A stretch of 64,000 bases of DNA from contig NC_082709.1 of the NCBI RefSeq assembly GCF_030144855.1, forward strand, positions 149,172,001 through 149,236,000, written 5' to 3'. A model generated the notes under the pieces. It saw nothing but the letters and a program-made list of their open reading frames with translations. It was not told the origin of the DNA and ran no database searches. How positions within the stretch are numbered: position 1 is the stretch's first letter; every line of letters starts with the position of its first letter. This document shows, one piece after another, positions 32,211-58,900 of the stretch. The translations under genes were made by a program, and so were the position numbers. The DNA is from Hypanus sabinus. Lineage: Eukaryota.

Positions 32211-32249
32211 ATTTCATTCCATATGTCAGTGTTTTAAAAAAGTCCTGAT

Positions 32250-33461: not shown

Positions 33462-33591
33462 GTCTCAATGTGGCTCAACAAGACCAACCAAGTGCTTTCA
33501 CACTAGTCTGCAATGACCAATCGGGGCAGAAGATGGGAAGGGGAAGTGAATCTATTCGAGTGAGCATCTTCAATAAGAATAAGAAAGAATG
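33462..33591 (+). CDS. TRIM45: TRIM45 coding exon 3 (filamin-type repeat)
   Basis: GLNVAQQDQPSAFTLVCNDQSGQKMGRGSESIRVSIFNKNKKE; phases match neighbours. Confidence 0.9.
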
Positions 33592-34567
33592 GTGGGTAAT
33601 TTGCAAGAAAGTGAGCAGGAAGGTAAATTAATCTCTAATAGACTGTAGGTGTCTTGCTGAGTAAAGCAGTTTAAGCTTGGGTGAGTAATTAATTAGTGTA
33701 ACTTCCATTTCCAAATATAAATTAGGTTAATTTGATTCTGTAGTTTGATTTTTATATTTGCTATAGTTAACTTGCTAGACCTGTACTGCTATGGTAGCGG
33801 TTAGTTAATATTCTGTTAATAATTTGGGATTTGAAAACAAAAAGTTAGCTGTTAATAATGATGGCTACAGAAATGGCAGATTAGTGCAAAACCCATCTGG
33901 TTCTCTACTGTTCTTCAGGAGAGGAATCCTATCATAGAGTAATTCACAAACCCTTTAGCTCAAATTTTCCATCCCAACCAAACTCCCTTTCTACACTAAT
34001 TCCATTTGCCTAGATTTGACCCATATTCCTCAAAACCTCTCCTCTCCATCTAAGAGTCCAAATAGCTTTTAAACATTGTAATCGTCCCTGCCACTGGCAC
34101 CTTGTTCCCACCTAGTTCGGCCAATGCACGACTTCAAACTCACCATTATAGTTAACTCTCAAGTACCTTGCCACTCATTTCCAGTAAGGATTGATGAAAA
34201 ATGAAACATTGCTTCCAATACTGTAAGACAGTTGTTTTGTTCGCTGCCAAAAACAGAAAAAATACTTAATTACAAAATATTTGGACATTTATCTTTATAG
34301 TCGAATAATACTAAATTTTCTATGGAAAATCAGAATTCTTTGAACCTGTGGGCATCTTTCTGTGGGGCCTAATTCCATACTGTATTACTCTATGACTGAG
34401 ATTTGACTGAAAATTTAACAGAATTTGTAGTAATTCTTGTATCTGCTTGCATCAGAATCAGCATTTTCATCTCTGGTTTGGAAAGAGAGACACCTCAACA
34501 GTAATCCATTGCTTTACTGAAAGTATTTACTCTGAATATGCCGGTCATCTATTATTTCAATCCACAG

Positions 34568-34679
34568 TATCAAAACAACACTGCAAGATAATCACGATGG
34601 AACTTACCGAATTATATATACACCTCGGATGTCAGGCTCATATGTGGCGTGGGTCTGTATAAATGGACAGCATGTACAG
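34568..34679 (+). CDS. TRIM45: TRIM45 coding exon 4 (filamin-type repeat)
   Basis: IKTTLQDNHDGTYRIIYTPRMSGSYVAWVCINGQHVQ; cag|gtgggt. Confidence 0.92.
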
Positions 34680-35969
34680 GTGGGTCAAGACTGGTATAAG
34701 TGATATAAAGATTTCAAATTATCTTGATGTTGCATAAAACAGCTTGCATTCTGTTCTAGTGGAATGGATTTGAAAATGAACTAAGTATTAATGTTTCTCT
34801 CTGTCTGAAAATGAGACACCTTCTTGCTCCTGACCATCACATTATGTACACATGCAAAGTTTTTCCACTGACTACAGTGTAATAATGTGAGCTGGATACT
34901 GGAATTTACAGTAGCTTTATTCTGAACTGGATCCTGTCCTCAAAATCACTTCCTTACTCTTTCACAGGAGTGGGTGTTTTAAAAAAAAGAGGAAGCTAGA
35001 CTTCTTCCTTGCTTCAAGAAAAAAGTGCTTCTCTCATTATGAAAATAATCTGGTATTTTTTTTTATTTCTGCATTACCGAATAACATGAAATATCTTGGA
35101 ACCTCTGTCTAAGTGTATTCTGCATTTTTTCCTTCCAGGCATTAATTTTCTGGCCTGTTTCAGATTGATCCAAAAGTTGTTCTTGTGTGAAGCTGCTTAG
35201 AGCAGATTGCACACACTGTGTTAATTTATAGAAATAAACAGCTGAGTAAACAAGTCCCTTTACCCCTCCTGAGTCCACTCACCTACTACCCACATACTTG
35301 ACTCATCAGTGCCCTCTTTCCCTCTTCTGGTTCCATTACCAGATTCTCTCCCACTGATTGCTATCATCTCATTCCTTACCTATCACATAGCAGCACTAGT
35401 TCCCACTTAATATCCCCTAGCAGCATTCTCTGCCTTCACCCTTCCTCCTGCTGGCTCCGTCTCTCAACTCCACCCATCCCTCTCTCTGACCTGGCTCCAA
35501 CCTACCTCTCATCCTTCACTGACCCACAGTTTAGCGGTCATCGTTCGTCCCGTCTCACCATCACCAAACCCCACCCCTTTGTAATGGCAATCATCCGTCT
35601 TCAGTCTCAGCCCCAATGCAGGGTTTTGATCTGAAATGTCAGCATGACTTTTCCTTCCGTGGATGCCGAACTCTGCTGGCAGATTGCGTGTTTCTCCAAA
35701 TTCCAGCATCTGGAATTCCTTGCATCTCCTATTCATTCACTAAAATTCAGAGTGTTACTTCTAAATGTTTCAGATCCACTCAGGTAATCGGCATGCTGAA
35801 AATCAGCTATGCTGTCGTATGGGAAAGGTCGTTAACTGCAGATGCTGGAACCCGGAACCACTGTCCATTTCCCTCTACAGCCGTCTGATCCGCTGAGCTC
35901 CACCAGCAGCTTGACGGTTTTCCCTTTTGTTCACATTGTTCTCTGCACTCTTTTAATAGGAATGTAATT

Positions 35970-37210
35970 TGCACTCAGAGGCCACTCTCGTAGGTACACA
36001 TGCTTGTCAATGCAAATACCTAACCAGCCAATCATGTGGCAGCAACTTGGTGCATATAAGCATGCAGGCATGGTCAAAGAGGTTCAGTTGTTCAATGGGA
36101 AAGAAATGTAATCTAAGCAACTTTGACTGTGGAATGATTGCTGGTGTCAGAAGGGATGGTTTGAGTATCTCAAAAATTCAAAGTTCAAAGTACATTTATT
36201 ATCAAAGAATGTATACTTCATACAACCTTGAGATTTGTCTTCTTACAGGCAGCCACAAAACAAAGAAACACTGTAGAAGCCATTTTTAAAAAAAACCCAC
36301 ACACACACCCAATATATGGAAAAAAGGAATAAATAATGCAAATGATAAAAGTAAACAAGTAACAAAGAATGGGAACTGCAGAGCTCCAAAAACAAGTTCA
36401 CAGCCACAGAACCGGTTCAGTGCTGAGGTGAGTGCAGCCAGCCCAGAAGCCCGATAGCCACATCCACAGAGCCAGATCAACACTGAGGCGAGTGTTGCCG
36501 ATGGTTGCAGGCCATAGCTGCAGAGTCAGCCCGGTGCCGAGGCGGGCAAACCCCACGGACCAGTGAACTGAACAACGGCCTGACCTCTACCGTCAGCCTC
36601 AATCTCACTCGGCACTTATGTCAGCCAAGCATCAGTTTTTATTTTGGTTTTAGACCCAGGCCTCGCTGCTTTGATCCCGCCCCAGTTCCACTGCAGCAAT
36701 GGCTGATGCCATCGTACCTGGACTCTCGAGTGTCCAGCCCACCAAATTCCCCAGGACTCTGCAAAAATCACCAGGTCCTATGAAGAGAAGCCACAGCGTG
36801 TGGAGTGCAGTGATCATAGTCCAGAAAAAGGTGAATGGTAGTATTAATAGAATAATTGATGGTTTTGTTTGCTGTCTGTAAAGTTTCACTCTGATTCACC
36901 GGTGCCTGAGTTATTTCTGGGCTTTTCACACACAATCATCACTAGAGTTTAAAGAGAATGGTTTGGAAAAACAAAAGACATCCAGTTCTGTGGGTGAAAA
37001 TTCCTTATTAATGAAAGCTGTCAGAGGAGAGTGGCCAGACTGGTTCAAGCTGACAGGAAGGCAACAGTAACTCAAGTAACCTCACGTTACAATGATGGTA
37101 TGCAAAAGAGCATTTCTGAATGCACAGCATTCATTGAATGCACAGAACCTTGAAGCGGGTGGGCTACAGCAGCAGAAGACAGGGAACATACACTCAGTGG
37201 CCAGGAAGTG
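35970..37210 (+). mobile_element. Non-autonomous Tc1-like element, interrupted by a LINE-tail insertion at about 36175-36890
   Basis: cactcag(a/t)ggccac termini; internal cagccaatcatgtggcagcaact and ggttcaagctgacaggaaggc; same family at 39230-40110 and 56583-57114. Confidence 0.7.
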
Positions 37211-37535
37211 TATTTTGGGTGGATAATGCCTGCACTGTTACAGCACATACCTGAAATTAAACACACTGATCAGAGTAGTCTTTGTCCTAAAAGTATAGAA
37301 ATTATTTCATCTGATGTCAACAGCTTTCAGATTTGTTAATGGAAAACTTGCCTCAATCTTATCAACCTCATTGATTTCTGATTGTACAGCCTTTACTTTA
37401 TCTGAAGCTGGAGGTTGCCCCACTTGTCCTTCGAAATGTTCGCTGTACAGCAAACGCAAACACAATTTGAATACTTCTGCAAAAGTATACAGTTAGGGTG
37501 TGTGATACTTTTGCACAGTACTGTAGTAATTTGAT

Positions 37536-37750
37536 ATACAGGTGTCTCCCCCACCCTCTTACAAAGGTTGAGCGTTCCTATGAAACCTTTCTTAAGCCAA
37601 AATGGCGTAAAGCGAAGAACCCTTAATTTATATGGGAAAAATTTTCCAAAATGCAAAAACCCTCTTTGTAATGCGAAAACAAGTGACTAATGTAGGTCTT
37701 TTGTAAAAGCGGAGTGGCATAAAGTGAACATTTGTAAAGCGGGGTACACT
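37536..37750. mobile_element. Tigger-like MITE
   Basis: tacaggtgtctcccc...ttacaaa versus tttgtaaagcggggtacactg as imperfect TIRs; about 215 bp. Confidence 0.45.
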
Positions 37751-39229
37751 GCTGCCACAGAAAGAGAAAAACAAATGTCATGACATATGCGAGTGATGAT
37801 AAAGGTGATTCCAATGTGGGTCTCTGTTGTGGACTGGGAGTGCAAAGGGGGCAGGGAGAGGGGAATCATTGTTGGGGATAGGGAAAGAGAGAGTTTAGGA
37901 GCAGGAAACAGCAGTGAGACATTCTGTAATGATCAATAAGCCAATTGTTTGAAATCAAATGACCTTGATTGGTGTCTTGGGGCTGGGAGTGTTTGCACGT
38001 GGGTCACACCCCCCATCCCTGGCATTCCTTTTCTGCCACGCGTCCCACACCCCTCCTGTAGCACTCCACCCTGGACATTTCCAACTTCCTTTGCTTCTGC
38101 AAGATTTATAAACTCTCACTTCACTCCACATTGACAAATAGAGTATTGTGGAAAAGTCTTGAGCACATATGAAGACTTTTGCATAGTCCTACATATGCCA
38201 TTCATAAGACATAGGAGCAGAATTAGACCACTCGCCTGAGCGAGTCTGCTCTGCCATTCTATCATGGCCGATTTATTATCCTGCTTAAGCGCTTTCCTGT
38301 CTTTTGCCTGTAACCTTTGCCCTTACTAATCAAGAACCTATCAACCCATACTTTAAATATCCCCTATGACGTCCTCCACAGCAGTCTCCAGCAATGAATT
38401 CCACAGATTCATCCTCTGGCTGAAGAAAGTCATTCTCATCTCTGTTCTAAACGGAAGTCCCTCTATTCTACTCAGCGCTTGTTGATCTGATGTGACCTCT
38501 GGATAGCTGGCATGCAACCGCAGCGTATTCCAGCCTGGACCCTGACTCTTTACTCTCCTTTATACCTGTCTTTAAAGCCTGTTCTCCCCTTTAGCTGCCT
38601 GCATTGTTCCCAAAACCACTGCTATTATTGATCGGTTCCAGCAGATGATTCTAGTCACTTCAATTTGATAATATATTGTGGGTTATAATTATTTAATTCA
38701 TGGGTATTCAAGGAGTTATTGTTGGTCACTACCTTACTAGAGCAGCTGCACAAATATGCCTTGTTGTGGAGACAATTCTGCACCAAGGGACATGTGCAAG
38801 GCATGCTGGGAGTATTCTGCATGGACCAGGACGAATGTGGCTCCAACAACACTTGAATCTTGACATTATCCATAACAAAGCTGACATCTTCCATTTTCCA
38901 ACATGGTCAGTGCTTGCCATCTAAATTTGCCGTAAAAGCTTGCAGAATTTTGGCAGCTCATTGACAGGAGAGAAGCAGTGCCACTAACTGTTGCTAGGTC
39001 ATTGCAAAGTTCTTTTGCCTGGTCCTAACCTGGGAATTTTCTGCTTTCTTTTCATTGTTGCTGGAGGGAAATTTCCCAGTAATTTTCTAACCAATGCTCT
39101 TCAGCACAGACAACAGTAATTCAAGTAGGTGGCATACCTCTATCTTAACTCGATAAATTTTAATTTTTCCATCATTGCCTACTTCCTGTGGATTAATGAA
39201 AATAAATATATATTTTTCATCTTTTGCTA

Positions 39230-40110
39230 ATGCAAATATCTAATCAGCCAATGACGTGGCTGCAACTCAATTCATAAAAACATGCAGACGTGGTCAAGGG
39301 GTTCAGTTGTGGTTCGGTTGTTCTTCAGAAGGAACTAAAAATGTGATCTAGGTGACTTTGACTGTGGAATAATTGTTGATTCTAGTTAGGGGAGTTTGAC
39401 TATCCCAGAACTACTGATCTGCTGGTTTTCATGTACAACAGTGTCTGGAGTTCACAGAGAATGGTTCAAAACACAAATAATCATCCAGTGAGCAGCAGTT
39501 CTGTGGGCCAAAATGTCATTTTAATGCGAGAAGTCAGAGGAGAATGGCGAGACTGGTTCACATTGAGAGGAAGAGTACACGCTTTAGAACAGTGGTTTCT
39601 GAAAACAGTTTCTTTGGAGAGAAGTTGGATGAGAGGAGACATGATAGGGGTGTACAAGATATTAAGAGGAATAGATAGAGTGGATAGTCAGTGCCTCTCC
39701 CCCAGGGCACCACTGCTCAGTACAAGAGGACATGGCTTTAAGGTAAGGGGAGGGAAGTTCAAGGGGGATATTAGAGGAAGGTTTTCCACTCAGAGAGTGG
39801 TTGGTGCGTGGAATGCACTGCCTGAGTCAGTGGTGGAGGCAGATACACTAGTGAAGTTTAAGAGACTACGAGACAGGTAAATGGAGGAATTTAAGGTGGG
39901 GGGTTATATGGGAGGCAGGGTTGAGGGTCGGCACAACATTGTGGGCCAAAGGGCCTGTAATGTGCTGTACTATTCCATGTTCTATGTGTGCAGAAGATTG
40001 TCTTTGAATGCACAGCGTGTTAAACCTTAAACTGGACGAGCTACAGCTGCAGAAGACGAGCATAAACTCAGTGGCAACTTGATTAGGTATAGGATCTATC
40101 TATTAAAGTG
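39230..40110 (+). mobile_element. Non-autonomous Tc1-like element split by a CR1 3' end (about 39600-39985)
   Basis: Same family as 35970-37210; ends aaagtggccagtgagtgta; CR1 piece GDMIGVYKILRGIDRVD. Confidence 0.7.
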
Positions 40111-40188
40111 GCCAGTGAGTGTATTTGTAGCTTAAAAAAATATTTTTTGTGTTTCATATAACTTCAGTAGAGAGTTGTTGTTTTCTAG

Positions 40189-40315
40189 GGTTCCCCATTC
40201 ACCATAACGGTAGAAGGCAAATTCCGTGAGCACGTTGGCATATTCCACTGCTGCACGTTCTGCTCCAGTGGTGGACAAAAGGATGTCCGTTGTGGCTGCA
40301 AAGGGACAATGCCAG
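40189..40315 (+). CDS. TRIM45: TRIM45 coding exon 5
   Basis: GSPFTITVEGKFREHVGIFHCCTFCSSGGQKDVRCGCKGTMP; g|gtgagc. Confidence 0.93.
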
Positions 40316-40465
40316 GTGAGCTTGATAAAATGTCTGGTCTGTATAGTGCCTCAGCAACACGCTTTTTTGCAATAATAAACAATTAATTGTCAGATTTAAA
40401 GGCTGTGTAATAGTGAGTAATTAAGCCAAGTGATTAAAACTTAACACAGTGATCTGCAAGTATTA

Positions 40466-40760
40466 ACACAAGAAAATCTGCAGATGCTGGAAATCCAAGC
40501 AACACACACAAGATGCAGGAGGAACTCAGCAGGCCAGGCAGCATCTGTGGAAAAGAGTACAGTCGACTTTTCGGGCTGAGACCCTTCAACAGGACTGGGG
40601 AAAAGAAAGATGAGAAGTCAGAGCAAGAAGGTGCTTTAACTTCTCATAATTTTCCAATCCTGATGAAGGGTCTGGGCCCAAAGCGTGACTGTTTAATCTT
40701 TTTCATAGATGCTGCCTGGCCTGCTGAGTTCCTCCAGCATGTTGAGTGTACTGTTCTGCA
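40466..40760. repeat. Inverted pair of Penelope pLTR ends
   Basis: gatgcaggaggaactcagcaggccaggcagcatct...acccttcaacaggac versus ctgatgaagggtctgggccc...gatgctgcctggcctgctgagttcctccagcat. Confidence 0.8.
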
Positions 40761-40949
40761 AATATTGTGGTTTTTTTTCTCTGATATGTAAATTATGGCA
40801 GAATTTGTTCATTGCTTTGGACAGTTTATTAAAATAATTCACACTGAGCTCATCAATTTTGTAAAGCAAAGAAAACTTCAGAGTACACGTCACCACTTAC
40901 AACCCTGAGATTCTTTTTCTGCGAACATACTTAACAAATCTATAGAAAA

Positions 40950-42300
40950 ATAATTCGTGCTGAGCTCATCAATTTCATCAACTTTGCCTCCCACTTCGAC
41001 CCTGTCCTTAAATTCACTTGGCCCATTTCTGACACCTCCTTCCCCTTTCTTGATCTCTCTGTCATCATTTCTAGAGATGAACTGATGACTGACATCTTTT
41101 ATAAAACCTACCAGTTTCCACAACTACCTTGACTATTTCTCTTCCCACCCTGTCTCTTGCAAAAATGCTTTTCCCTTTTCTCAGTTCCTTCATGTCTACC
41201 ACATCTGTTCCCAGCATGAAACTTTCCTTTCCAGAACCTCAGAGATGCCGTCATTTGTAGAGGAATGGGGTTTCCCTTCCTCCACAATTGATGCTACCCT
41301 CACTCACACCTCCTCCATTTCTCGAAAATTCGCGCTCACCCCATCTTCCCACCACCTTAACGGTGATAGAGTTCCTCATCCTGAGCTAGCACCCCATTTG
41401 CCTCTTGAATCCAAATCATCATTCTCCACAACTACAGCCATCTTCAAAGGCATCCTACTGCCAACCATCTTTCCCTCCTCTCCCACCCGCCGCCGCCTTC
41501 CACAGGGATCACTCCCTCCAAGATTCTCTTGTCCATTTGTGCCTCCCCTCCTGGCACTTACCCTTGCATGCAGCTTAAATGTCTCACCTGCCCGTTCACC
41601 TCCTCTCTCGCCTCAATTAAAGTCCCCAAACAGTCCTTCAAGATGAGGTAACACTTCACCTGTGAATCTTTTGTGTCCACTGCTCCTGATGTGGCCTCCT
41701 CTACATTGGTGGGACCCATCATAAATTGGGGGATTGCTTTGTCAAGTACCTCTACTCCATCAGGCAAAAGTGGAACTTGGCAGTGGCCAAACATTTTAAT
41801 TCTGTTTCCCATTCCCATTCCGACATGTCAGTCCATGGCCTCCTCTTGTGCCACAATGAGGCCACACTCATGTTGGAGCGACAACACCTTATGTTCCATC
41901 TGGGTAACCTCCAACCCGATGGCATGAATGTTGATTTCCGCTTTGGTAAAAAAGAATTCTCACCCTTCCCTCTTCTATTTCGCTCTCTGCTCTCTTACCT
42001 CTAATCATGTTCCCTTAACCTTTCTACCCCCACCCCCGCCCTTGGTGCTCCTGCTCTTTCCCTTTCCCTTATCGTCCACTCTTCTCTCCTATCAGAATCC
42101 TACTTCTCCAGCCTTTGACTTTTCCCACCCACTTGGCTTCACCTATCACCTTCTAGCTATTCTCCCGCCACCCTGGTTCTGTTATCTTCCCCCCTTCCTT
42201 TCCAGTCCTGAAGAAGGGTCTCGGCCCAAAATGTCGGCTGTTTGTTCATTTCTATGGATGCTGCCTGACCTGTTGAGTTCCTCCAGCATTTTGTGTGTGT
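40950..42300 (+). mobile_element. Penelope-like element 3' half (degenerate RT, GIY-YIG, pLTR)
   Basis: Parallels 11090-13200 (ELINFINFASHF..., HFTCES..., VAKHFNS); pLTR ctgaagaagggtctcggccc at 42208. Confidence 0.85.
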
Positions 42301-42991
42301 TGCCTTAGAAACTGAATATGCTTTTCTCTTTAATAAATAAAAACAAAGTGCTGGAATCATTCAGCAGGTCACTCACCTGTGGGAAGAGAAACAGGATGAA
42401 TGTGAGGATGACGACTCTGTTCAAACTGATTGACAGGTTGATAAAGGAAGGTTTTTCTTTCTGATTTTATTCAGAAACCAGAATTAAGATTCAGAAATGA
42501 ATTTCATGGCTGTATATGGTGACATATATTGTATTTGATAATAAATTTATATCGAATTTTGAACTTTATAGATTTCAACATAATAAAGAGTCTGACAAGA
42601 TGGGTGGTGAAGGAACTGAGCATTAAAACAAGTGGTTTGACCCAGGATATTTCATTATTTGAAGTGACTTACCTTTGTTAAGTGGTGCCAGAAGGCAAAA
42701 TGTGAGGTGTAAATTTGTTAAATATATATTTCTATGAAATTTTATACATGAAGAAACTTTATGAACCAGATCTTCTTTTGTCCTTGATGGAACATGAAGA
42801 CAGTGAAAATGATTAAATATTTGATTTTTAAAATTTTGAATGTTTATTCCTTTACATAGATGCTGCCTGGCCTGTTGAATTCCTCCAGCATTTTATGTGT
42901 ATTGCTGTAAATGTTTTTCTGACATGGTTTTACATGAGGTTTACAGGCATTATTCTGTTAACACCAGTGTCTCTTTGCCTTTGATTGGTAG

Positions 42992-43140
42992 GTGGGTTTC
43001 AAGGCTGCGGACATGGACATAAAACTCATCCTGGCCATCCGCATTGGTCCTGTTGTGGAAATGCGAGTAAGGATTCGGAATGCTTTGGAGCACTGCATGG
43101 CAGCTCATACCCGAACCTGGTTAGGACTGTTGCTCTGTAG
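42992..43140 (+). CDS. TRIM45: TRIM45 last coding exon
   Basis: GGFQGCGHGHKTHPGHPHWSCCG...NLVRTVAL*; the six exons total 1695 nt, i.e. 564 aa plus stop. Confidence 0.95.
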
Positions 43141-49237: not shown

Positions 49238-49268
49238 ATGATCACCATTCTGCTCCTGGCAGCAATCT
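49238..49268 (+). CDS. Leader exon (L1) of a VJ-type IgSF gene
   Basis: ATG ATC ACC ATT CTG CTC CTG GCA GCA ATC T|gtaagt = MITILLLAAI, phase 1, 97-nt intron. Confidence 0.85.
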
Positions 49269-49365
49269 GTAAGTATAATATTCAAAAGTGACACACAATT
49301 GTTCACTCTTAATGTATAATTATGATGTTTGCTACTTGCAACTTTAACGAGCTGTATTATGATAG

Positions 49366-49710
49366 GTGTTGCCACAGGACTGGATTTGCAGCAATCTCCT
49401 CGATCGCTCCGGCTGCTGGCGGGGGATTCTGCCTCCTTCAGCTGTAGTTTACAAGGCAATGGAGAGTTAGTAAAAGGCAGCTTTTATTGGCATTTTACTA
49501 AAGAAACGTCTGGTGATTTGCACGCGAGAAACATCAGCGCCAAGAGTGGAGATGGTCGCATCAGTGTGTTTGGAACTAATTCTCCAAGTTTCAGAAGCTC
49601 CTTGACGATTAACAACCTTGAGCTGGCAGACAGCGGGACGTATTATTGCAACGCTATCACTTCGCGCTCCGAGAATATTCAGGGCTTCGGATCTCGGCTG
49701 ATTGTTGAAG
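49366..49710 (+). CDS. Germline-joined VJ Ig V-set exon (non-rearranging antigen-receptor-like gene)
   Basis: (C)VATGLDLQQSPRSLRLLAGDSASFSC...FYWHF...DGRISV...SSLTINNLELADSGTYYCNAITSRSENIQGFGSRLIVE G|gtaggg; open frame, both Cys, Trp, DxGxYYC and a J-like GxG(S)xLxV motif. Confidence 0.92.
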
Positions 49711-49980
49711 GTAGGGTAGAAAGACGGCTAAAAGCTCCATATAATTTTTGTGAATCACGTATCAGACTAGTATTTTATCAACTTCATTCACGAGAGGGCA
49801 CATTGGTATGACTCCTTTGTTGTATTTTTTTCTCTCTCACGGTAACACATCGAAGCTGCACCCTCTCTAACATGCTGGTGGAGAGAGTTTTATTCTGTTT
49901 TTTTTAGTGCTGGAAATATTTTTTACTCAATTTCCCCCGGCATCAATAAAGTATGTCTGCCTGTCTGTCTTTCTTTCCAG

Positions 49981-50165
49981 ATATCACCGCTGCCACAATG
50001 TCCAGGTCTGAATTCTAATTTCTATCGTTCCCGAGTCCCCGACAAGGAGGCTCAATTTTATTCCTGATACATGCTTGTAACCAAGAGTTTATGATCCACA
50101 CACAAATGCCCCATCCTTCGCAGTCCCGATGCAGCGTCTTGGCGCGAAGATAGCATCGTAAAACA
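49981..50165 (+). pseudogene. Possible degenerate C1 exon 5' part of the right VJ gene
   Basis: Strong acceptor tttctttccag ends 49980; a frame mosaic gives ...QV*ILIS, PRQGGSILFLI, TCL, VTK; cut by a CR1 insertion at about 50170. Confidence 0.3.
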
Positions 50166-50169
50166 TAGA

Positions 50170-50575
50170 GGCCATCGAGTCTGTTCCGCCATTACATCGT
50201 GGCTGATTTATTATCTCTCATTTATTTCCAGCATCCTGTCTTTTCCCCGTTACCTTTGACGCCCTGACTAATCAAGAACCTGGCAATCACTGCTTTAAAT
50301 ATAATCTTGACTTGACCTTCACAGATTCACCACCCGCTGGCGAAAGAAATTCAACCTCACCTCTGTTCTAAGTGGACGTCCCTTTATTTTGAGGCTGTGG
50401 CCTTTGGTCCTAAACTCACCCACTATAGGAAACATCCAGTCCACATCCACTCTATCTAAATCCTTCGATATTCATTACGTTTCAATGAAATCCTCACCCC
50501 CCCCCCCCCCCCCCGCTCCTCTTCTAAACTCCAGCAAGTACAGGTCCAGAGCCGGCAAACGCGTATCGTACATTA
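50170..50575 (-). mobile_element. CR1 3' end
   Basis: aaacatagaggccatcgagtctg tail; LRLWPLVLNSPT antisense text. Confidence 0.8.
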
Positions 50576-50939
50576 ACCCACAAACAAGAGAAAATCTGCA
50601 GATGCCGGTGATCCGAGCGACGTATACAAAATGCTGGAGGAACTCAGATGGCCAGGCAGTATCTATGGGAAAAAGTACAGTGGACGTTTTGGGCCAAGAC
50701 CCTTCGGCTGTGTCCCGTATTGATCACACTTTTTGATTTTGCTTCCATGTTATACATCAACTCACCCACTGACTGCAACTTTGCCCTATCATTTGCCCGT
50801 CCTTCCTCACATTCTCATTACACACTGCATCTACTTGTATACCAACTGCCCCATCCTCAGCCCTATCTCTCCGGTTCTCATTACCCCTGCCAAATTAGTT
50901 TAAATCCTCCCCAACTGCTCTAGCAAACCCGAATTTGCC

Positions 50940-53900
50940 AAAATCCTCCCTTAATTTCTGTGATATTGGTCAATATTTCCAGCAGAATCTCTTTTGGCTT
51001 ATAAGCTTATGAAATAGTTTCAAATCGAATAGCTTAACAGAGCGGGTGCCGCCGTAGGAGGGCTTTGGCTCAACGGGGCTTCGGAGATAACGGGTCAAGG
51101 CGAGACAACAACAGGGAGTATGCCCACGAGGCCGGTGTTCCGATCTCCGCGTCAGATGTGGGAAATCCGGGAGACTCCGGACGGCCACGTCTGCCCCAGG
51201 TGTGTTGAGCTGCAGCACCTTATGCAGCTTGATGACCTTTCTCTGGTCAGGGAAAGTGAGGAGGTGATAGAGAGGAGCGATAGGCAATTAGTCACACCGG
51301 GGCCTTGGGAGACAGATAAGTGGGTAACAGGAGAGGAAAGGGCAAGAGGTAGATGCAAGATTGAATCCTACTGGCTGTCCCCCTTAACAATAAGTACTCC
51401 TGTTTGAGTACTGTTGGGGGGGCGGGTACGGCCGACCTGGGGGAAGTGACAGTGGCCGCGCCTCTGGCAGAGTCTGACCCTGTGGCTCAAAAGGGTAGGG
51501 AAAGGAAGAGGATGGCAGCAGTGACGGGGACTTTATAGTCAGGGGGTCAGACAGGCGATTCTGTGGACGCAGGAAAGAAACACAGATGGTAATTTGCCTC
51601 CCAGGTGCCAGGGTCCGGGATGTTTCTGATCAGATACCCAATATCCCGAAGTGGGAAAGTCAACAGCCAAAGGTCATGGTACATATTGGCACCAACAGAG
51701 GTAGGAAAAGAGAGGAAATCCTGAAAACAGACTACAGGGAGTTAGGAAAGAAGCTGAGAAGCAGGACCACAAGGGTAGTAATCGCAGGATTACTGCCTGT
51801 GCCACGCAACAGAGAGTAATAGAGTGAGGTGGAGGATAAAGGTGTGGCTGAGGGATTGGAGCAGGGGGCAGGGATTCAGATTTCTGGATCATTGGGACTT
51901 CTTTTGGGACTGGCGTGACCTGCACAATAAGGATGGGTTACACTTGAATACAAGGGGGACCAATATCCAAGCAGGGAGGTAGGCTAAGGCTATTGGGGAG
52001 AGTTTAAACTTGATTTGCTGGTGGGAACTGAACTGAAGAGACAGAGGAAGGGGTGGTTGGCTCACATATAGAGAAAGCTTGTAGGCAGTGTGAGAGGGAG
52101 GATAGGCAGGTGATCGAGAAGATATGCACTCAGACTGATGGTTTGAGATGTGTATTTTAATGCAAGGAGTATCATGAACAGAGCGGATGAGGTTAGAGTG
52201 TGGATCAGTACTTGGAGCTATGTGGCCATTACAGAGACTTGGATGGCTTGGGGCAGGAATGGCTACTTAGAGTGCCAGGCTTTAGATGTTTCAGAAAGAA
52301 CAGGGAAGGAGGCAAAAGCGGTGGTGCATGGCACTGCTGATCAGTGGTAGTGTCATGGCTACAGAAAAGGAGGAAGTCATAAAGGGATTGTCTACTGAGT
52401 CTCTGTGGGTGGAAGTTAGAAAGAGGGAAGAGTCAATAACTCTACTGGGTGTTTTTTATAGACCACCCAATAGTAACAGAGACATCAAGGAGCAGATAGA
52501 GAGATAGATTATGGAAAGGTGTAATAATAACAGGATTGTTGTGGTGGGAAATTTTAATTTCCCAAATATTGATTGACATCTCCCTAGAGCAAGGGGTTTA
52601 GAAGGGATGGAGTTTGTTAGGTGTGTTCAGAAAGGTTTTCTGATACAATACAGTATGTAGATAAGCCTACAAGAGGAGAGGCTGTGCTTGATTTGTTATT
52701 GGGAAATGAACCTGGTCAGGTGTCAGGTCTCTCAGTGGGAGAGCATTTTGGAGATAATGATCACAATTCTATCTCCTTTATCATAGCACTGGAGAGGGAT
52801 AGGAGGAGACAAGTCAAGAAAACGTTTAATTGGAGTAAGGGGAAATATGAAGCTATCACACAGGAACTTGGAAACATAAATTGAGAGCAGATATTCTCAG
52901 GGAAATGTACCGCAGAAATGTGGCAAATGTTCACTGGATATTTGCATGGTGTTCTGCTTAGTACGTTCCAATGAGACAGGTTAAAAATGGTAGGGTATAG
53001 GGTATAGGGTACAAAGACTGTAGAAAATCTAGTCAAGAAGAAAAGATTAGGAAAGGTTACAAAAACTAGGTAATGAAATAGATCTAGAAGATTAAAAAGC
53101 TAGCAGGAAGGAGCTTAAGAATGAAATTAGGAGAGCCAGAAGGGGCCATGAGAAGTCCTTGGTGAGCAGGATTAAGGAAACCCCCAAGGTATTCTATAAG
53201 TATGTAAAGAGCAAGAGGATAAGATGTGAGAGAATAGGACCAATCAAATGTGACAATGGAAAAGTGTGTATGGAACCAGAGATACTTAATGTATCTCTGA
53301 GATACATAATGAATACTTTGCTTCAGTATTCACTATGGAAAAGGACCTTGGTGATTGTAGGGATGACTTACAGTGGACTGAAAAGCTTGAGCGTGTAGAT
53401 ATTAAGAAAGAGGATGTGTTTGGAGCTCTTGGAAAGCATCAGGCTGGCTAAGTCACTGGGACAGGATGAGGTATCCCCTAGGTTACTGTGGGAGGCAAGG
53501 GAGGAGATTGCCATGATCTTTGCATCATCATGGGGATGGGAGAGGTTCTGGAGGATTGGAGGGTTGCAGATCCTGTTCCCTTATTCAAGAAAGGGAGCAG
53601 AGATAGCTCTGGAAATTATAGACCAGTGAGTATTACTTCAGTGGTTGGTAAATTGATGAAGAAGACCATGAGAGGCAGGAGTTATGAACATTTGGAGAGG
53701 CATAATATAATTATGAATAGTCAGCATAGCTTTGTGAAAGGCAGGTTGTGCCTTACGAGCCTTATTGAATTTTTTGAGGATGTGACTAAACACATTGATG
53801 AAGGTAGAACAGTAGATGTAGTGTATATGGATTTCAGCAAGGCATTTGATAAGGTACCCCATGCAAGGCTTATTGAGAAAGTAAGGAGGCATGGGATCCA

Positions 53901-54975
53901 TGGGGAAATTACTTTGTGGATCTAGAACTGGCTTGCCCACAGAAGGCAAAGAGTGGTTGTAGATGGGTCATATTCTGCATGGAGGTTGGTGACTGTTGGT
54001 GTGCCTCAGGGATCTGTTCTGGGACCCCTTCTCTTTGTGATTTTTATAAATGACCTGGATGAGGAAGTGCAGGAATGGGTTAGTAAATCTGCTGATGACA
54101 CAAAGGTTGGGGGGGGGGGGTTGTGGATAGTGTGGAGGGCTGTCAAGAGTTACAGCGGGACATTGATAGGATGCAAAACTGAGCTGAGAAGTGGCAGATG
54201 TAATTCAACCCAGTTAATTGTGAGGTGGTTCATTTTGGTAGGTCAAATCTGATGGTAGAATATAGTGTTAATGGTAAGACACTTGGCTGTGTGGAGGATT
54301 AGAGGGATGTTGGGTTCCGAGTCCAGAGGAGGTTCAAAGCTGTTGCACAGGTTGTCGGTGTGGTTGAGAAGACATATGGTATATTGGCCTTCATCAACTA
54401 TAGGACTGAGTTCAAGAGCTGAGAGGTAATGTTACAGCTGTATAGGACCCTACTCAGATCCCACTTGGAGTACTGTACTCAATTCTGGTCATCTCATTTA
54501 AAGAAGGATCTTGAAACTATAGAAAGGGTGCAGAGGTGATTTGCAAGGATATTGCCTGTAATGGGGAGCATGCCTTACAAGAATTGGTTGAGTTCTTACA
54601 AGAAAAAGAGAATTCCTTTTCTCCTTGGAATGACAGAGGATGAGAGGTGACCTGATAGATGTGTATAAGATGATGAGAGGCATTGATCGTGTGGATAGTC
54701 AGGCTTTTTCCCAGGGCTAACACAAGAGGGCACTCTTTTAAGGTGCTTGGGAGTAGGAACAGAAGAGATGTCGGTGGTAAGTTTTTTACGCAGACAGTGG
54801 TGAGTGCAGGGAATGGGCTGTCGGCATCTGTGGTGGAGGCAGATACAATAGGGTCTTTTAATTGAGTCCTGGATAGGTACATGCAGCTTATAAAAATAGA
54901 GGGCTATGGGTGTCTTAGGTAATTTCTAAAGTAAATACATATTCGGCACAGCACTGTGGGCTGAAGGACCTGTAT
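50940..54975 (+). mobile_element. Near full-length degenerate CR1 LINE
   Basis: ORF1 QMWEIRE...HVCPRCVELQHL and VICLPGARVRDV...VHIGTN; ORF2 [52 protein letters not shown]; 3' tail at about 54940-54975. Confidence 0.92.
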
Positions 54976-55467
54976 TGTGCTGCTAGTTTTCTATGTTTCT
55001 AATCTTATCTTTCAGCATTGTTTTTTTTTGAAATCGGGTTTCCAGATAGATTGGCAATGGTTACCTGTCCTTTAAGTACTCATGTCGAGGCAGTCTGAAC
55101 CTTCTTGTGAAGGGACTCCCATTGTGCAGTTAATGGAGATTTTCACATAGTGATGATGGAATTTACAAATTCAACTGAGTATGACCTAAAGGGTAGAGAT
55201 ACTTCTGAGCTGCACTATTATCCAGCTGAAACTGTATTTGTTCTTCCTTCAAACCCATAGTTTGTCTTGTGTCCGATATCCATTATCTAGCTTGTAGTTT
55301 TGTTTTTGTTTGAAAGATTAACTTAAGACTGTTAGTATGAACATGCAATATTAAACTCTCCTGCATTTACCACAGTTATGAAATCCACATAGTAACAGAA
55401 AATGCCGGAAATGCTCAGTAGGCCAGGTTGCATTCTGTCGAGAGAACCAGAGAAGTTGGAAAACAAA

Positions 55468-55819
55468 CACAAGGAAATCTGCAGATGCTGGAAATTCAAA
55501 CAACACACACAAAATGCTGGTGGAACGCAGCAGGCCAGGCAGCATCTATAGGGAGAAGCGCTGTCACCTTTTCTGGCTGAGACCATCAGGACTTTGTCAG
55601 AAAGGGAGCAGAGATAGCTCTGGAAATTATAGACCAGTGAGTCTTACTTCAGTGGTTGGTAAATTGATGAGGAAGACCATGAGAGACAGGAGTTATGAAC
55701 ATTTAGAGAGGCGTAATTAGGAATAGTCCTGACGAAGGGTCTCGGCCCGAAATGTCGACAGCGTTTCTCCCTATAGATGCTGCCTGGCCTGCTGCGTTCC
55801 GCTAGCATTTTGTGTGTTT
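55468..55819. mobile_element. Inverted Penelope pLTR pair enclosing a CR1-derived filler
   Basis: 15-bp TSD aagttggaaaacaaa at 55453-55467 and 55820-55834; filler 55598-55716 matches 53588-53706. Confidence 0.85.
55726..55759 (+). ncRNA. Minimal type I hammerhead ribozyme motif in a Penelope pLTR (best-preserved copy)
   Basis: gtc CTGACGA a gggt-ctcg-gccc GAAA T GTC gac: core boxes, stem II hairpin and gtc/gac stem I. Confidence 0.65.
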
Positions 55820-56094
55820 AAGTTGGAAAACAAATATGTTTCAAATCTGAGAGCAGGGGTGGGTAGAGAGAACATCCGTGAAATGCTAGAGACCAAGGGT
55901 ACGCAAGGTCATTCACTGCTTTCTGAGTGGCTTAATAATGGAAAAATGATGGAAAATAAGAAGAGAAAGAGTAGGAAACAAAATACTGCGCTGGGTCTTT
56001 TGGAGGCAGAGGACATCTTGTATGGAAATCTGCATCATTAAAAAAAAGTTGGAAGTACCCAGCAGACCAAGCTGCATCTGCTGAGAGATAAAAG

Positions 56095-56426
56095 TGGAGT
56101 TGAGGCATATCAGAATTGGCTACAAGGAGTAAAAGATGGTGAATTCAGTGCTGAAATGAAAATCCTGGCAATCATCAAAACCGTCAGATCCTTATTACTG
56201 TAAGTTTGTTTTTAAGTAATTAATGATTCCATTTCTTTTTCTTTTAACAGATTTTCATTGGAAGAATCATGTTTCCAGTGGTATATTTTTACATTTTACC
56301 ATTTTGGCTCACTCCACTGCCCACATATCCCCACAAAACACATTAGATGACTGGGAATTTGCAGGAATATTAGTGACATGGAAAGAAGAAATAGAACTCA
56401 CAGACTTTGAAAGGAAGTATCTCTAA
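56095..56426 (+). pseudogene. Candidate downstream exon remnants (TM-like and terminal) of the right VJ gene
   Basis: GVEAYQNWLQGVKDGEFSAEMKILAIIKTVRSLLL* at about 56097-56203. Strong acceptor atttctttttcttttaacag ends 56250 and is followed by an open phase-1 frame to a stop at 56426. Confidence 0.3.
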
Positions 56427-56582
56427 ACTCAAGACAATGAGGGAAATACTCTCAACATAGCCTAAAAATTGTGGTTATAAGATGTTTTCGTATTTACTAT
56501 GTGAGATTTTGGTGCATTAAGCAATAATGACTCATGATATACTTTTGACCCTCTTCCAATTAGGATACAATTAAGGCCGACT

Positions 56583-57114
56583 GTACACCCAGTGGTCACA
56601 TCATCACATACCTCCTGGACCTAATAAAGCAGTCACTGAGTTTATGTTCCTGGTCTTCTTCACCTCAAAGTTCGACATATGTATTCAGGGATGCTCTTCT
56701 GCACCCCACCGTTATAACGCGTGGTTATCTGAATTACTGTCACCATCCTGTCAACTTGAACCAGTCTGGCCACTCTCCTCTGAACTCTCTCATTAGAAGG
56801 CATTTTTACTCACACAACTGCCGCTCGCTGGGTTCTCCTTTCCACCATTCTTTGTAAACTCTAGAGACTTGTGTGTGAAAATCCCAGCAGACCATCAGTT
56901 TCTGAGAAACCCATACTACCCTGTCTGACATCAATAGGGTCAAAGTCACTTAGGTCACATTTCTTTCCCATTCTGATGTTTAGACTGAACAATTGCATCT
57001 CTTGGCCATGTTTGTCTGCTTTAATTCATTGGGTTGCTGCCACATGATTGGCTGATTAGATATTTGCATTAATGTGCAAGTATACGTGCACCTAATGAAG
57101 TGGCTTCTGAGTGT
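56583..57114 (-). mobile_element. Non-autonomous Tc1-like element
   Basis: tacacccagtggtcac ... aatgaagtggcttctgagtgta termini; reverse complement of the 35970 family. Confidence 0.7.
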
Positions 57115-57509
57115 AGGTTGTAACAACATGGAATGTCAAAATATTAAACATGCTGATTGATAATTTATCTATTGTATTCCAGGCATAATAACCAGTTTGC
57201 ATTACTTATTGACAGTCCTCCGCTACAGTTTATTTGCCCTGCTCTTGTGTTATTTCATTTGTGTTGAGAAATTCTCCTAAACCCAAAACAGAGGTATGTC
57301 TTGCAAGGTTTTGAAACGTGTGCTTGTATATTGTGAAGTTTTCATTCCTAAAAGTTATATTTCTTTATATCAAATACAAAGGCTCCCCAAATACAAATGT
57401 ACTTCTGAAAAGCAGACTAACTAACCTTTCAAATTGTACACTAACCAGTTAAGGATTGAGGTTCGACTTTATTCTCCATATAAATTTACCTGTATTAGGA
57501 ATTTATAAA

Positions 57510-58900
57510 TACAAAAGATTCTGCAGTTCCTGGAAATCTGGAGCAACACATACAAAATGCTGGAGAAACTCAGCAGGTCAGGTAGCATCAATGGAAATGA
57601 AAAAACAGCCAACATTTTGGGCCAAGATGTTTTGGGACTGGATAGGGAGGGGCAAGACATCAGAATAAAAAAGTGAGGTAAGTTAAGGAGGATTGGCTAG
57701 AATGTGCTAGGTGAACTTTGGATATTATTGATGTCCCCAACAGATTCATGGGTGAAGTGTTGCCTCACCCAAAGGAACTGGCGGGGGCCCCGAATAGAGG
57801 TAAGGGATGAGGTGAATGGACAGGTGTAACATTTGTCATTTGCAAGGATATGTGCTAAGAGGGAGCTTAGTGGAGAGGGACGAGAGGATGCTCCATGTGG
57901 AGAGCGGAGAATGAAGATAGATAAAGATCGGTTATGGTTTGCTGGTAGGATCTTGTTGAAGATGGTGGAATTTGTGGAGGATGTATTGGATGCGGAGTCT
58001 CATGGAACGAAGACGAGTAACTCTTGAGATGTCCTCTTTTTCAAAGAGCAAGGTTTCCCTTCTTCCACCATTGATGCTACCTTCACCCGCATCTCCATTT
58101 CCTGGATATCCACACTCACTCCATCTTCCCACCACCTTAACAGGGATCAAGTTCCTCTTGTCCTCAACTACCACCTCATGAGCTTCCATATTCAACACAT
58201 TGTTCTCCAAAATTTCCACCATCTTCAATAGGATCCTACCACCTAACATATCATTTTTGCTCCCTTCCCCCTCCCCCCCAATCCATCCCTCTGGGGTCAC
58301 CTATTGTATACAGTGCTCCTGATGCAGCCTCCTCTACATTGCTGAAACCCGAGATAATTTGGGGGAACGCTTTGTCAAGCACCTTCATTCTATCTGCCAA
58401 AATTGGAAGTTCCTGGTGACCAACCATTTTAATTTCTATCGCTATTCCCATTCCGACATGTCAGTGCATGGCTCCCTCATTTTGCCATGATGAGACCACA
58501 CTCAGGGTGGAGGAGCAACACCTCATATTCCATCTAGGATGGCATGACCATCGATTTCTCCTTACAGTAAAATTTCACCTCCCCCTTCCCTCCTCTTCTA
58601 TTCCTCACTCTGGTCTCTTACCTCTTCTCCTCACCTGTATGTCATCTTCCCCCCGCACCGGTGCCCCTCCTTTTTCTTTCTCCAATGGTCCATTGTCCTC
58701 TCCTATCAGATTCCTTCTTCTCCAGCTCTTTACTGTTCCCATTCACTTGGCTTTACCTATCACCTTGTAGCTAATCCTTTTCCCCCTCCCCCCACCATTT
58801 TATTCAGGCATCTCCCCCCTTACTTTCCAGCCCTGAAGAAGAGTCTCAGCCTGGACTATGTACTCTTTATTCATTTCCATAGTTGTTGCTTGACCATCTC
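57510..58900. mobile_element. Penelope-like fragments in inverted arrangement
   Basis: Minus-strand pLTR and RT tail at 57510-58010, then plus-strand RT/GIY-YIG remnant and pLTR at 58020-58900. Confidence 0.75.

What the first reader, a model, noticed from the sequence alone, without database searches (positions are those of the whole stretch)
49238..49710. Intact antigen-receptor-like gene with V and J already joined in the germline, next to TRIM45
Seen in sequence: a TCR/Ig-style split leader (phase-1 97-nt intron) splices to one open exon encoding a complete V-set domain (Cys, Trp, DSGTYYC), an 11-residue CDR3-like loop and a J-like GFGSRLIVE, ending in a phase-1 donor. No recombination signal sequence (RSS) follows it. 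Established: non-rearranging VJ-type IgSF families (NKp30/NCR3, PRARP/VJC1-type genes) are discussed as relatives of the pre-RAG antigen-receptor ancestor. Inference: this may be a chondrichthyan member of such a family, or an unrecognised one. It is not a normal rearranging V segment.
Basis: partly seen in the sequence, partly recalled or inferred. Interest (0 to 1): 0.75.

Follow-up and report, generated by a model that had tools for sequence, protein, structure and literature searches.

The report
NKp30-like VJ receptor gene beside TRIM45
This is a real, intact gene in a cartilaginous fish for a small cell-surface immune receptor with one antibody-like domain that needs no gene rearrangement, built like the natural-killer receptor NKp30; a shark has the same gene beside TRIM45, so it is an unnamed member of a known kind.

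Summary
There is a split leader (49238-49268), a 97-nt phase-1 intron, and one open V-plus-J exon (49366-49710) ending in a phase-1 donor. No RSS follows it, and TRIM45 ends 6.1 kb upstream on the same strand.

I found the missing end of the gene, a transmembrane exon at 57183-57280. It splices in frame to give a 157-aa protein with no C domain. The membrane anchor carries an arginine and the tail is 4 residues long, which is the design of NKp30 (NCR3).

A starry smooth-hound shark protein (XP_078088791.1, uncharacterized) matches the V domain at 48% identity and the TM exon at 59%. Its gene lies 6.7 kb behind a RING/B-box/Filamin gene, the same arrangement as here. A bamboo-shark relative (54%) is mislabelled "CD8 beta-like".

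The nearest named protein among 1.8 billion is nurse-shark NCR3 (36-40%). However, shark VNAR and TCR-alpha V domains are about as close, and the tree leaves the three proteins as their own lineage.

Verdict: a new, unnamed member of the known non-rearranging VJ receptor kind, at a 1p13-type locus rather than an MHC-type one. Other agents of this scan have already reported several NKp30-family genes elsewhere in this genome.

The parts
49238..49268 (+). Leader exon: ATG plus 10 codons plus 1 base (MITILLLAAI/C), phase-1 donor CT|GTAAGT
   Evidence: Aligns with the leader of Mustelus P0007 (MMLATLLLFAAC), split at the same residue.
49269..49365 (+). Intron 1, 97 nt, GT..AG, phase 1 (split-leader intron)
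49366..49710 (+). Single VJ exon: V-set domain with Cys26, Trp41, DSGTYYC94, an 11-residue CDR3-like loop, J-like GFGSRLIVE, one conserved N-glycosylation site (NIS), and a phase-1 donor AAG|GTAGGG
   Evidence: Pfam V-set 9e-13. 54% and 48% identity to shark proteins P0005 and P0007. AlphaFold2 model pLDDT 86.8, pTM 0.80.
49711..57182 (+). Intron 2, 7,472 nt. It holds no C1-type exon and contains LINE reverse-transcriptase debris (53488-54249). A possible alternative donor T|GTGAAT after 49749 would add a 13-residue stalk.
   Evidence: no C1 exon; RVT_1; alternative donor in frame.
57183..57280 (+). Transmembrane and tail exon, phase-1 acceptor TTGTATTCCAG|G. It encodes (G)IITSLHYLLTVLRYSLFALLLCYFICVEKFS and the stop TAA at 57278-57280. 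There is an Arg inside the hydrophobic span and a 4-residue tail.
   Evidence: tblastn with Mustelus P0007 residues 142-170: 59% identity, E 8e-5. BLASTP E 7e-9. The three-exon CDS is 474 nt and in frame. Mean hydropathy of the best 19-residue window is 2.08.
57664..57669 (+). First AATAAA after the stop codon, a candidate poly(A) signal
   Evidence: Pattern match only.
22012..43140 (+). Neighbouring TRIM45 gene. Exons at 22012-22461 (RING, B-box 1), 23509-24243 (B-box 2, coiled coil), about 34536-34700 (Filamin), about 40189-40383, and a last coding exon about 42985-43140.
   Evidence: The upstream neighbour of the Mustelus orthologue has the same domain set.

Best explanation
An intact three-exon gene (leader, VJ, TM) encodes a 157-residue type I membrane receptor. 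It has a signal peptide, one non-rearranging V domain with a built-in J strand, essentially no stalk, a membrane anchor carrying an arginine, and a 4-residue cytoplasmic tail. This is the design of NKp30 (NCR3).

The protein cannot signal by itself. Most likely it pairs through the buried Arg with an Asp-bearing ITAM adaptor (of CD3-zeta, FcR-gamma or DAP12 type) and works as a germline-encoded activating receptor on lymphoid or NK-like cells. Its ligand is a fixed, probably self or stress, surface molecule.

It is the orthologue of Mustelus asterias LOC144506486, which sits in the same place behind TRIM45. The gene therefore predates the shark-ray split.

Shown: the exon structure, reading frame, fold class, Arg-bearing anchor, lack of a C domain, lack of an RSS, and synteny. 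Inferred: expression, adaptor pairing, activating function, and the nature of the ligand.
For: - Gene structure: canonical splice sites and a 474-nt in-frame CDS.
- Fold: V-set E 9e-13. The model has pLDDT 86.8 with strands A, A', B, C, C', D, E, F, G and no C'' strand. Best structural matches are shark VNARs (TM 0.79-0.87), then VL, TCR V-alpha, CD79b and human NKp30 at rank 42.
- All three exons are conserved with Mustelus P0007: the leader, the V domain at 48%, and the TM exon at 59% including the Arg and the stop position.
- Synteny: P0007's gene spans 7.4 kb and lies 6.7 kb downstream of, and on the same strand as, a 571-aa RING/B-box/Filamin gene. Here the gene spans 8.0 kb and lies 6.1 kb behind TRIM45.
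- Nearest relatives by best single-domain score: P0005 98.8 bits, P0007 87.3, nurse-shark NCR3 (QTT61904.1) 44.1, the next protein 35.9. BLASTP to NCR3 gives 36% identity, E 1e-17. The stretch WH...GD...N.SAK..GRI is shared with shark NCR3.
- 41 of 114 V positions are invariant in the three orthologues, including Cys, Trp, DxGxYYC, GxG and the N-x-S site.
- For NKp30 itself, a short stalk and a TM that binds CD3-zeta by charge are described in PMC12272517.
Against:
- The Mustelus protein has 12 more residues between V and TM. I found no matching micro-exon, only a weaker alternative donor.
- The bamboo-shark model P0005 has no hydrophobic C-terminus, so the TM form is not seen in every species' annotation.
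- Only two public proteins of this lineage were found in 5.8 billion clusters.
- Membership of the NCR3 clade is not shown. The trio is its own branch (71/80), and the AU test rejects neither trio+NCR3 (p 0.235) nor trio+TCR/Ig (p 0.128).
- A profile of the trio ranks TCR-alpha, TCR-mu and VNAR above human NKp30 in the PDB.
Confidence: 0.75

Rival explanations
1. It is simply one of the already published shark/ray NCR3-family subtypes (Kinlein et al. 2021 reported eight divergent nurse-shark subtypes). That would make it an ordinary member of a named family, not a separate lineage.
For: The nearest named protein is nurse-shark NCR3. The architecture is identical. The AU test does not reject a clade of the trio with NCR3 (p 0.235). 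Other agents' notes report many NKp30-family genes in this genome.
Against: Identity to NCR3 is only 36-40%. The free tree keeps the trio outside the NCR3 clade, which takes in a newt protein instead (88/68). The flanking marker is TRIM45, a human 1p13 gene, not an MHC gene. In the bamboo shark the NCR3 orthologue P0154 and the trio member P0005 lie on different contigs (35.0 and 88.2 Mb). No nurse-shark protein close to P0005 turned up. I could not read the Kinlein paper, so its other seven subtypes were not compared.
Confidence: 0.3
2. It is a recently silenced or unexpressed pseudogene whose reading frame happens still to be open.
For: No expression data. No annotated protein of this genome was returned by either protein search. 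A decayed VJ-C1-TM pseudogene lies 43 kb upstream in the same window. The bamboo-shark model lacks a TM.
Against: All three exons are open with good splice sites and a preserved start and stop. The fold-defining residues, the glycosylation site and the TM Arg are kept between a ray and a shark. Neutral sequence would not keep these over that distance.
Confidence: 0.1
3. It is a germline-joined V-J of a true Ig light-chain or TCR-type cluster, a well-known thing in cartilaginous fish, with its C exon further downstream.
For: The V domain scores as well against TCR V-alpha, VL and VNAR as against NKp30. VJ-C1 genes are reported by other first-stage readers on both sides of this window (unchecked).
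Against: The next conserved coding exon is a TM exon that splices in frame and matches the C-terminus of the shark orthologue. No C1-like open frame lies between them or up to the window end. FR2 lacks the W-Y-x-Q-x-P-G motif of pairing V domains. The shark proteins are 171 aa with a single V-set domain.
Confidence: 0.03
4. It is a CD8-beta homologue, as NCBI's pipeline named the bamboo-shark relative.
For: The name of XP_043556870.1. CD8-beta also has a single V domain with a J-like strand.
Against: No CD8 chain is among the best 60 PDB sequence matches in three searches or the best 50 fold matches. There is no long Cys-bearing stalk, no cytoplasmic tail and a charged TM. Established knowledge: CD8B lies beside CD8A, not beside TRIM45.
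Confidence: 0.02

Closest known systems
NKp30 / NCR3, in particular the shark NCR3 family (nurse shark QTT61904.1; Kinlein et al. 2021, Immunogenetics 73:333, known to me only from its abstract and citations)
   Same: Split leader. One-exon non-rearranging VJ domain with a G-x-G-(T/S)-x-L-x-V strand and no C'' strand. No C domain. A basic residue in the membrane anchor (Arg here and in human NKp30, Lys in nurse-shark NCR3). The protein ends just after the anchor. It is the best named sequence match (44 bits, 36-40% identity).
   Different: It is not inside the NCR3 clade in my tree. It lies beside TRIM45 (human 1p13 type) instead of in an MHC class III setting. The stalk is shorter. Human NKp30 is a weaker match than TCR V-alpha or VNAR.
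IgNAR V (VNAR) and NAR-TcR V domains of elasmobranchs
   Same: Best solved-structure matches by sequence (9uvh, 40 bits, 33% identity) and by fold (TM 0.79-0.87, rmsd about 2 A). Shared short C'-D region without a C'' strand, and similar FR2/FR3 wording (YW.FTK..., SFSL.I..L...DSGTY.C).
   Different: VNAR is assembled by RAG from V, D and J segments and sits on C domains. Here V and J are one exon, there is no RSS, and the domain sits directly on a TM anchor. W-to-C spacing is about 5 residues longer.
UrIg and UrIg2 (non-rearranging shark 'antibody' genes; Flajnik et al. 2023, 2025, PMC12227049)
   Same: Split leader plus single-exon VJ in an elasmobranch. Discussed as relics of the pre-RAG receptor, on the MHC or an MHC-paralogous region.
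   Different: UrIg and UrIg2 carry 3 to 11 C1 domains. This gene has none. UrIg2 (9dmx) is not among the best 60 PDB matches of the V domain.
PRARP / VJ-C1 type genes and the VJ-C1 receptors reported around this window
   Same: Non-rearranging VJ exon. Neighbours in the same cluster (unchecked notes; a C1 pseudo-exon at about 4520-4921 on the minus strand was seen here).
   Different: They have a C1 domain between VJ and TM. This gene does not.
Teleost NITRs (activating forms)
   Same: Germline VJ-type V domain. Activating members have a charged TM and a short tail and use an ITAM adaptor.
   Different: NITRs are known only from bony fish and usually have a second (I-type) domain. In my tree they group on the Ig/TCR side (98/96), away from this trio.

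Membership tests
NKp30 / NCR3 family | Split leader and a single exon encoding V plus a J-like G-x-G strand, with no RSS | tested here: met
NKp30 / NCR3 family | No C domain; the V domain is followed by a short stalk and a TM | tested here: met
   The TM exon at 57183-57280 splices in frame. No C1-like frame lies in the 7.5-kb intron.
NKp30 / NCR3 family | Basic residue in the TM for an ITAM adaptor, and a short tail without signalling motifs | tested here: met
   LLTVLRYSLFALLLCYFICV followed by EKFS-stop. The Arg is conserved in Mustelus. The NKp30 rule is taken from PMC12272517. Pairing itself was not tested.
NKp30 / NCR3 family | V domain groups with NCR3 V domains in a tree | tested here: inconclusive
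   Best named hit, but the trio is a separate branch and deep nodes are unsupported. AU p is 0.235 for trio+NCR3 and 0.128 for trio+TCR/Ig. Only three NCR3-type proteins were available, and several tree labels (TRBV-like, NAR-TcR-like) rest on my reading of motifs.
NKp30 / NCR3 family | Linkage to the MHC (class III region) | tested here: inconclusive
   The only flanking marker in the window is TRIM45, a human 1p13.1 gene. An unchecked note puts TTF2 about 25 kb before the window. In the bamboo shark the NCR3 orthologue and the trio member are on different contigs. Whether the stingray chromosome also carries the MHC could not be checked.
NKp30 / NCR3 family | Binds B7H6 | not testable with these tools
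   Needs a binding assay.
Rearranging Ig/TCR V gene segment | V exon ends after the second Cys and is followed by a heptamer-spacer-nonamer RSS | tested here: not met
   The frame runs on through a CDR3-like loop and a J strand to a splice donor. There is no heptamer or nonamer.
Germline-joined Ig/TCR cluster gene of cartilaginous fish | The joined VJ splices to an Ig/TCR C1 exon a few kb downstream | tested here: not met
   No C1 exon up to 64000. The conserved next exon is a TM exon.
PRARP / VJ-C1 receptors | A C1 domain between VJ and TM | tested here: not met
   The shark orthologues are 171 aa with one V-set domain.
CD8 beta | Long Cys-bearing stalk, uncharged TM, cytoplasmic tail, CD8A as neighbour, sequence closest to CD8 | tested here: not met
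   (no CD8 among the listed matches). (no stalk or tail, charged TM). The neighbour is TRIM45.

The most novel reading that the evidence does not exclude
The TRIM45-linked VJ-TM gene is not a stray NCR3 copy. It is a separate, ancient lineage: the counterpart of MHC-linked NKp30 on the chromosome-1-type MHC paralogue, dating to the genome duplications, or a surviving never-split relative of the V lineage that gave NAR/TCR V domains. It would be kept only in elasmobranchs, inside a cluster of VJ-C1 genes. It might also be the receptor partner of a B7-type ligand of this region; in humans the B7 gene VTCN1 lies next to TRIM45, and from my own knowledge its receptor is still unknown.
Probability: 0.2. 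Interest if true: 0.7.

Novelty: new member of a known kind. Interest (0 to 1): 0.45.

Why it matters
Non-rearranging one-exon VJ genes are the living models for the receptor gene that the RAG transposon split about 500 million years ago. So far the discussion rests on NKp30 and UrIg in the MHC and UrIg2 in the antigen-receptor complex (PMC12227049, PMC10751288).

This gene adds a conserved, intact VJ receptor at a different landmark, TRIM45, which in humans marks 1p13, beside the B7 gene VTCN1 and within a chromosome-1 MHC-paralogous neighbourhood. Its V domain is as close to VNAR and TCR-alpha as to NKp30.

If the locus assignment holds at chromosome scale, it gives a third site for testing where antigen-receptor-like V domains sat before and after the genome duplications. 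In practical terms, it corrects a public misnomer ("CD8 beta chain-like") and supplies a gene model that the searched protein collections lack for this genome.

Tried and rejected
- The search for homologous proteins with the V domain alone was blank. With a four-sequence profile it gave only 5 proteins. So no close relative of 63-299 aa, and no protein of this genome, is in that collection. Longer or shorter models would have been missed.
- DNA of the shark loci was not available because the files were too large. No exon-by-exon or dN/dS comparison was possible.
- The Kinlein 2021 NCR3 paper and the 2023 UrIg paper are not held. The other seven nurse-shark NCR3 subtypes were therefore not compared.
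- C1 exon search: motif scan of all open frames of at least 45 aa and tblastn with the C1 pseudo-exon of the upstream pseudogene. Nothing was found downstream of the VJ exon.
- Stalk micro-exon search: 395 phase-1/phase-1 candidates were scored against the Mustelus stalk and none was convincing.
- A small 25-nt candidate exon at 49981-50005 was rejected because it would leave phase 2, incompatible with the TM acceptor.
- The tree and AU tests could not place the lineage. Solved-structure sequences (human NKp30, VNAR, UrIg2, CD8) could not be put in the tree, because they are not available as stored proteins and I did not type them in.
- An octamer-like ATTTGCAA at 49092-49099 is a 7/8 match expected by chance about once in four such regions, by my own estimate. 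It was not used.
- tblastn of all fetched proteins against the window found no second V exon of this type. The only other hit (133-417) is a Tc1/mariner-type transposase fragment.

Full report
**1. What is there**

- An ATG at 49238 opens a 31-nt leader exon (MITILLLAAI plus one base) that ends at a perfect donor, CT|GTAAGT.
- A 97-nt intron (49269-49365) follows.
- The next exon (49366-49710) completes a Cys codon and runs open for 114 further codons: VATGLDLQQSP...SFSC...FYWHF...DSGTYYC-NAITSRSENIQ-GFGSRLIVE. It ends with one extra base before AAG|GTAGGG.

Pfam calls a full-length V-set domain, E 9e-13, covering profile positions 1-108 of 109. No heptamer or nonamer follows the exon.

Upstream on the same strand lies a gene with RING, two B-boxes, a coiled coil and a Filamin repeat. 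Its C-terminus reads ...HCCTFCSSGGQK.../...GCGHGHKTHPGHPHWSCCG...RTVAL and ends near 43140. RING, B-box and Filamin without NHL repeats is the make-up of TRIM45 (established knowledge).

**2. The rest of the gene**

An exhaustive HMMER search of 1.8 billion representative proteins gave two single-domain matches far above the rest.
- P0005 (171 aa) is 54% identical.
- P0007 (171 aa) is 48% identical.

Higher-listed proteins are giant multi-Ig proteins whose scores add up over many domains. Ranked by best single domain, the order is P0005 98.8 bits, P0007 87.3, P0112 44.1, and the next protein 35.9.

The names are as follows.
- P0005 is XP_043556870.1, "T-cell surface glycoprotein CD8 beta chain-like", from Chiloscyllium plagiosum.
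- P0007 is XP_078088791.1, an uncharacterized protein of Mustelus asterias.
- P0112 is nurse-shark "natural cytotoxicity triggering receptor 3" (QTT61904.1).

tblastn with P0007 found its C-terminus in the window at 57188-57274, 59% identical, E 8e-5 (BLASTP E 7e-9). The sequence there shows a strong acceptor, TTGTATTCCAG|G, at 57183. It also shows a frame that accepts the phase-1 base of the VJ exon, and a stop at 57278-57280.

Leader plus VJ plus this exon gives a 474-nt in-frame CDS of 157 residues. It ends ...LIVE-G-IITSLHYLLTVLRYSLFALLLCYFICVEKFS. The last part is a membrane anchor (mean hydropathy 2.08 over 19 residues) with an arginine inside it and four residues after it. Mustelus has the same Arg and the same end (VVRYILFVLLMCYFILVETFY).

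There is no C1-type exon in the 7.5-kb intron or up to the window end. The intron holds LINE reverse-transcriptase debris.

Mustelus has 12 extra residues between V and TM. I found no micro-exon for them, only a weaker in-frame donor after 49749 that would add 13 residues. The junction therefore needs cDNA.

**3. Synteny**

The Mustelus gene spans 7.4 kb and lies 6.7 kb downstream of, and on the same strand as, a 571-residue protein with zf-RING_UBOX, zf-B_box and Filamin domains. Here the gene spans 8.0 kb and starts 6.1 kb after the TRIM45 stop. The two are therefore positional orthologues.

Notes of other agents of this scan say the genome is the Atlantic stingray (I did not check this). 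If so, the gene predates the shark-ray split.

In the bamboo shark, P0005 lies on an 88.2-Mb contig with no called gene within 10 kb. The clear orthologue of nurse-shark NCR3 (P0154, misnamed "cd79b") lies on a different, 35.0-Mb contig.

**4. What the V domain is like**

BLASTP to nurse-shark NCR3 gives 36% identity, E 1e-17. The two share WH..., GD, N.SAK, GRI, PSFR and DSG.YYC.

Against solved structures the picture is mixed.
- The single sequence hits a shark VNAR first (40 bits), then TCR V-alpha and VL.
- A profile of the three orthologues ranks TCR-alpha, TCR-mu and VNAR first. Human NKp30 is not in the best 60.
- Human NKp30 appears (E 2.4e-10) only when shark NCR3 is part of the profile.

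The AlphaFold2 model (12-row alignment, pLDDT 86.8, pTM 0.80) has strands A, A', B, C, C', D, E, F, G and no C'' strand. Foldseek ranks shark VNARs first (TM 0.79-0.87), then VL, TCR V-alpha and CD79b. Human NKp30 is at rank 42.

I built a maximum-likelihood tree of 40 V domains cut from the fetched proteins.
- The three orthologues stay together (71/80; Mustelus plus Chiloscyllium 98/96).
- They are outside the NCR3 clade, which takes in a newt two-VJ protein (88/68).
- They are also outside the Ig/TCR and NITR-like groups.
- The deep nodes are unsupported.
- AU tests reject neither trio+NCR3 (p 0.235) nor trio+TCR/Ig (p 0.128).

Caveats on the tree. The labels TRAV and IGLV are backed by source names. 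TRBV-like and NAR-TcR-like are my reading of motifs. Germline V rows lack the J part.

In short, this is a distinct VJ lineage. It is nearest to shark NCR3 by score and identical to NKp30 in architecture, but it cannot be placed by phylogeny.

**5. How it most likely works**

Shown: a secreted-pathway leader, one V domain with a built-in G strand, an anchor with a buried Arg, and no signalling tail.

Established for NKp30: a short stalk and a transmembrane charge contact with CD3-zeta (PMC12272517).

Inferred here: the Arg pairs with an Asp-bearing ITAM adaptor, so the protein acts as a germline-encoded activating receptor with a fixed ligand. The conserved Cys/Trp/DxGxYYC/GxG core, the conserved N-x-S site and the conserved anchor between ray and shark (41 of 114 V positions invariant) argue for a working gene.

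**6. Comparison with what is known**

Flajnik, Ohta and colleagues describe three non-rearranging VJ genes of elasmobranchs: NCR3 and UrIg in the MHC, and UrIg2 in the antigen-receptor complex. They use these to place the pre-RAG receptor in the proto-MHC (PMC12227049; PMC10751288).
- Neither of these papers mentions TRIM45.
- Two searches that included the term TRIM45 listed no paper containing it.

The gene here has no C domains, so it is not UrIg-like or PRARP-like. It has no RSS and no C exon, so it is neither a V segment nor a germline-joined Ig/TCR cluster. It has none of the CD8-beta hallmarks.

It is best filed as a new, unnamed member of the NKp30-like class of VJ receptors, at a 1p13-type locus. 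Unchecked first-stage notes add three things.
- TTF2 is said to lie about 25 kb before the window.
- VJ-C1 genes are reported on both sides of it.
- TRIM45 is said to sit inside a small VJ-type IgSF cluster.

I saw one of these myself: a decayed C1 exon at about 4520-4921 on the minus strand, with GFSPRDLNISW, two stops, and IgM-type C domains as best matches.

**7. Verdict**

Novelty is modest.
- The kind is known.
- Other agents have already reported several NKp30-family genes elsewhere in this genome.
- Orthologues exist in public annotation, unnamed or misnamed.

What is new is the complete gene model, the conserved TRIM45 linkage from shark to ray, and the separate lineage with a VNAR/TCR-like V domain.

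Interest is 0.45. The most novel reading still open is an ancient chromosome-1-paralogue counterpart of NKp30, or a never-split relative of NAR/TCR V. I give that a probability of about 0.2.

Noticed in passing
window 4520-4921 (minus strand), wider 4150-6576: Decayed C1-set exon (…AAGIYTLIRVAAGFSPRDLNISWTVTGD…ATCLVRHG…) with in-frame stops. Its best PDB matches are IgM heavy-chain C domains (E 3e-4), and UrIg2 is far down the list. Upstream of it are frame-shifted remains of a V with an Ig/TCR-type FR2 (W-x-L-L-K-T-G-T-R-Q-P). It is a different family from the gene studied here.
   Followed up: partly
Mustelus asterias GCA_964213995.1, about 10 kb downstream of the P0007 gene (no DNA held): The next gene on the same strand encodes a product of at least 242 aa with V-set, I-set and C2-set_3 hits. 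It could be a B7-type V-C gene and a candidate ligand, or another cluster member.
   Followed up: no
P0005 (XP_043556870.1, Chiloscyllium plagiosum) and P0154 (same species): Public names look wrong. P0005, called 'CD8 beta chain-like', is the relative of this TRIM45-linked gene, and its model ends without a hydrophobic anchor. P0154, called 'cd79b', is clearly the orthologue of nurse-shark NCR3.
   Followed up: partly
P0063 (newt Lissotriton, XP_078502078.1), P0030/P0151 (sturgeons), P0155 (sawshark), P0026 (epaulette shark, four VJ domains): Unnamed proteins with two to four tandem VJ-type domains. The newt one groups with shark NCR3 in the tree (82/70), which suggests multi-VJ NKp30 relatives outside cartilaginous fish.
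   Followed up: no
window 49092-49099: ATTTGCAA, a 7/8 match to the Ig-promoter octamer (ATTTGCAT), lies about 140 nt upstream of the ATG. This is within chance expectation.
   Followed up: no
window 57289-57299: A strong donor-like site, CAGAG|GTATGT, lies 13 nt after the stop codon. It could be a spliced 3' UTR or an alternative end.
   Followed up: no
window 14512-18118 (minus strand), 133-417 and 53488-54249 (plus strand): A long retroelement with integrase and reverse-transcriptase-like ORFs of 565, 404 and 275 aa in a GC-rich block (GC 0.56-0.62), a Tc1/mariner-type transposase fragment, and LINE RT debris inside intron 2 of the receptor gene.
   Followed up: no
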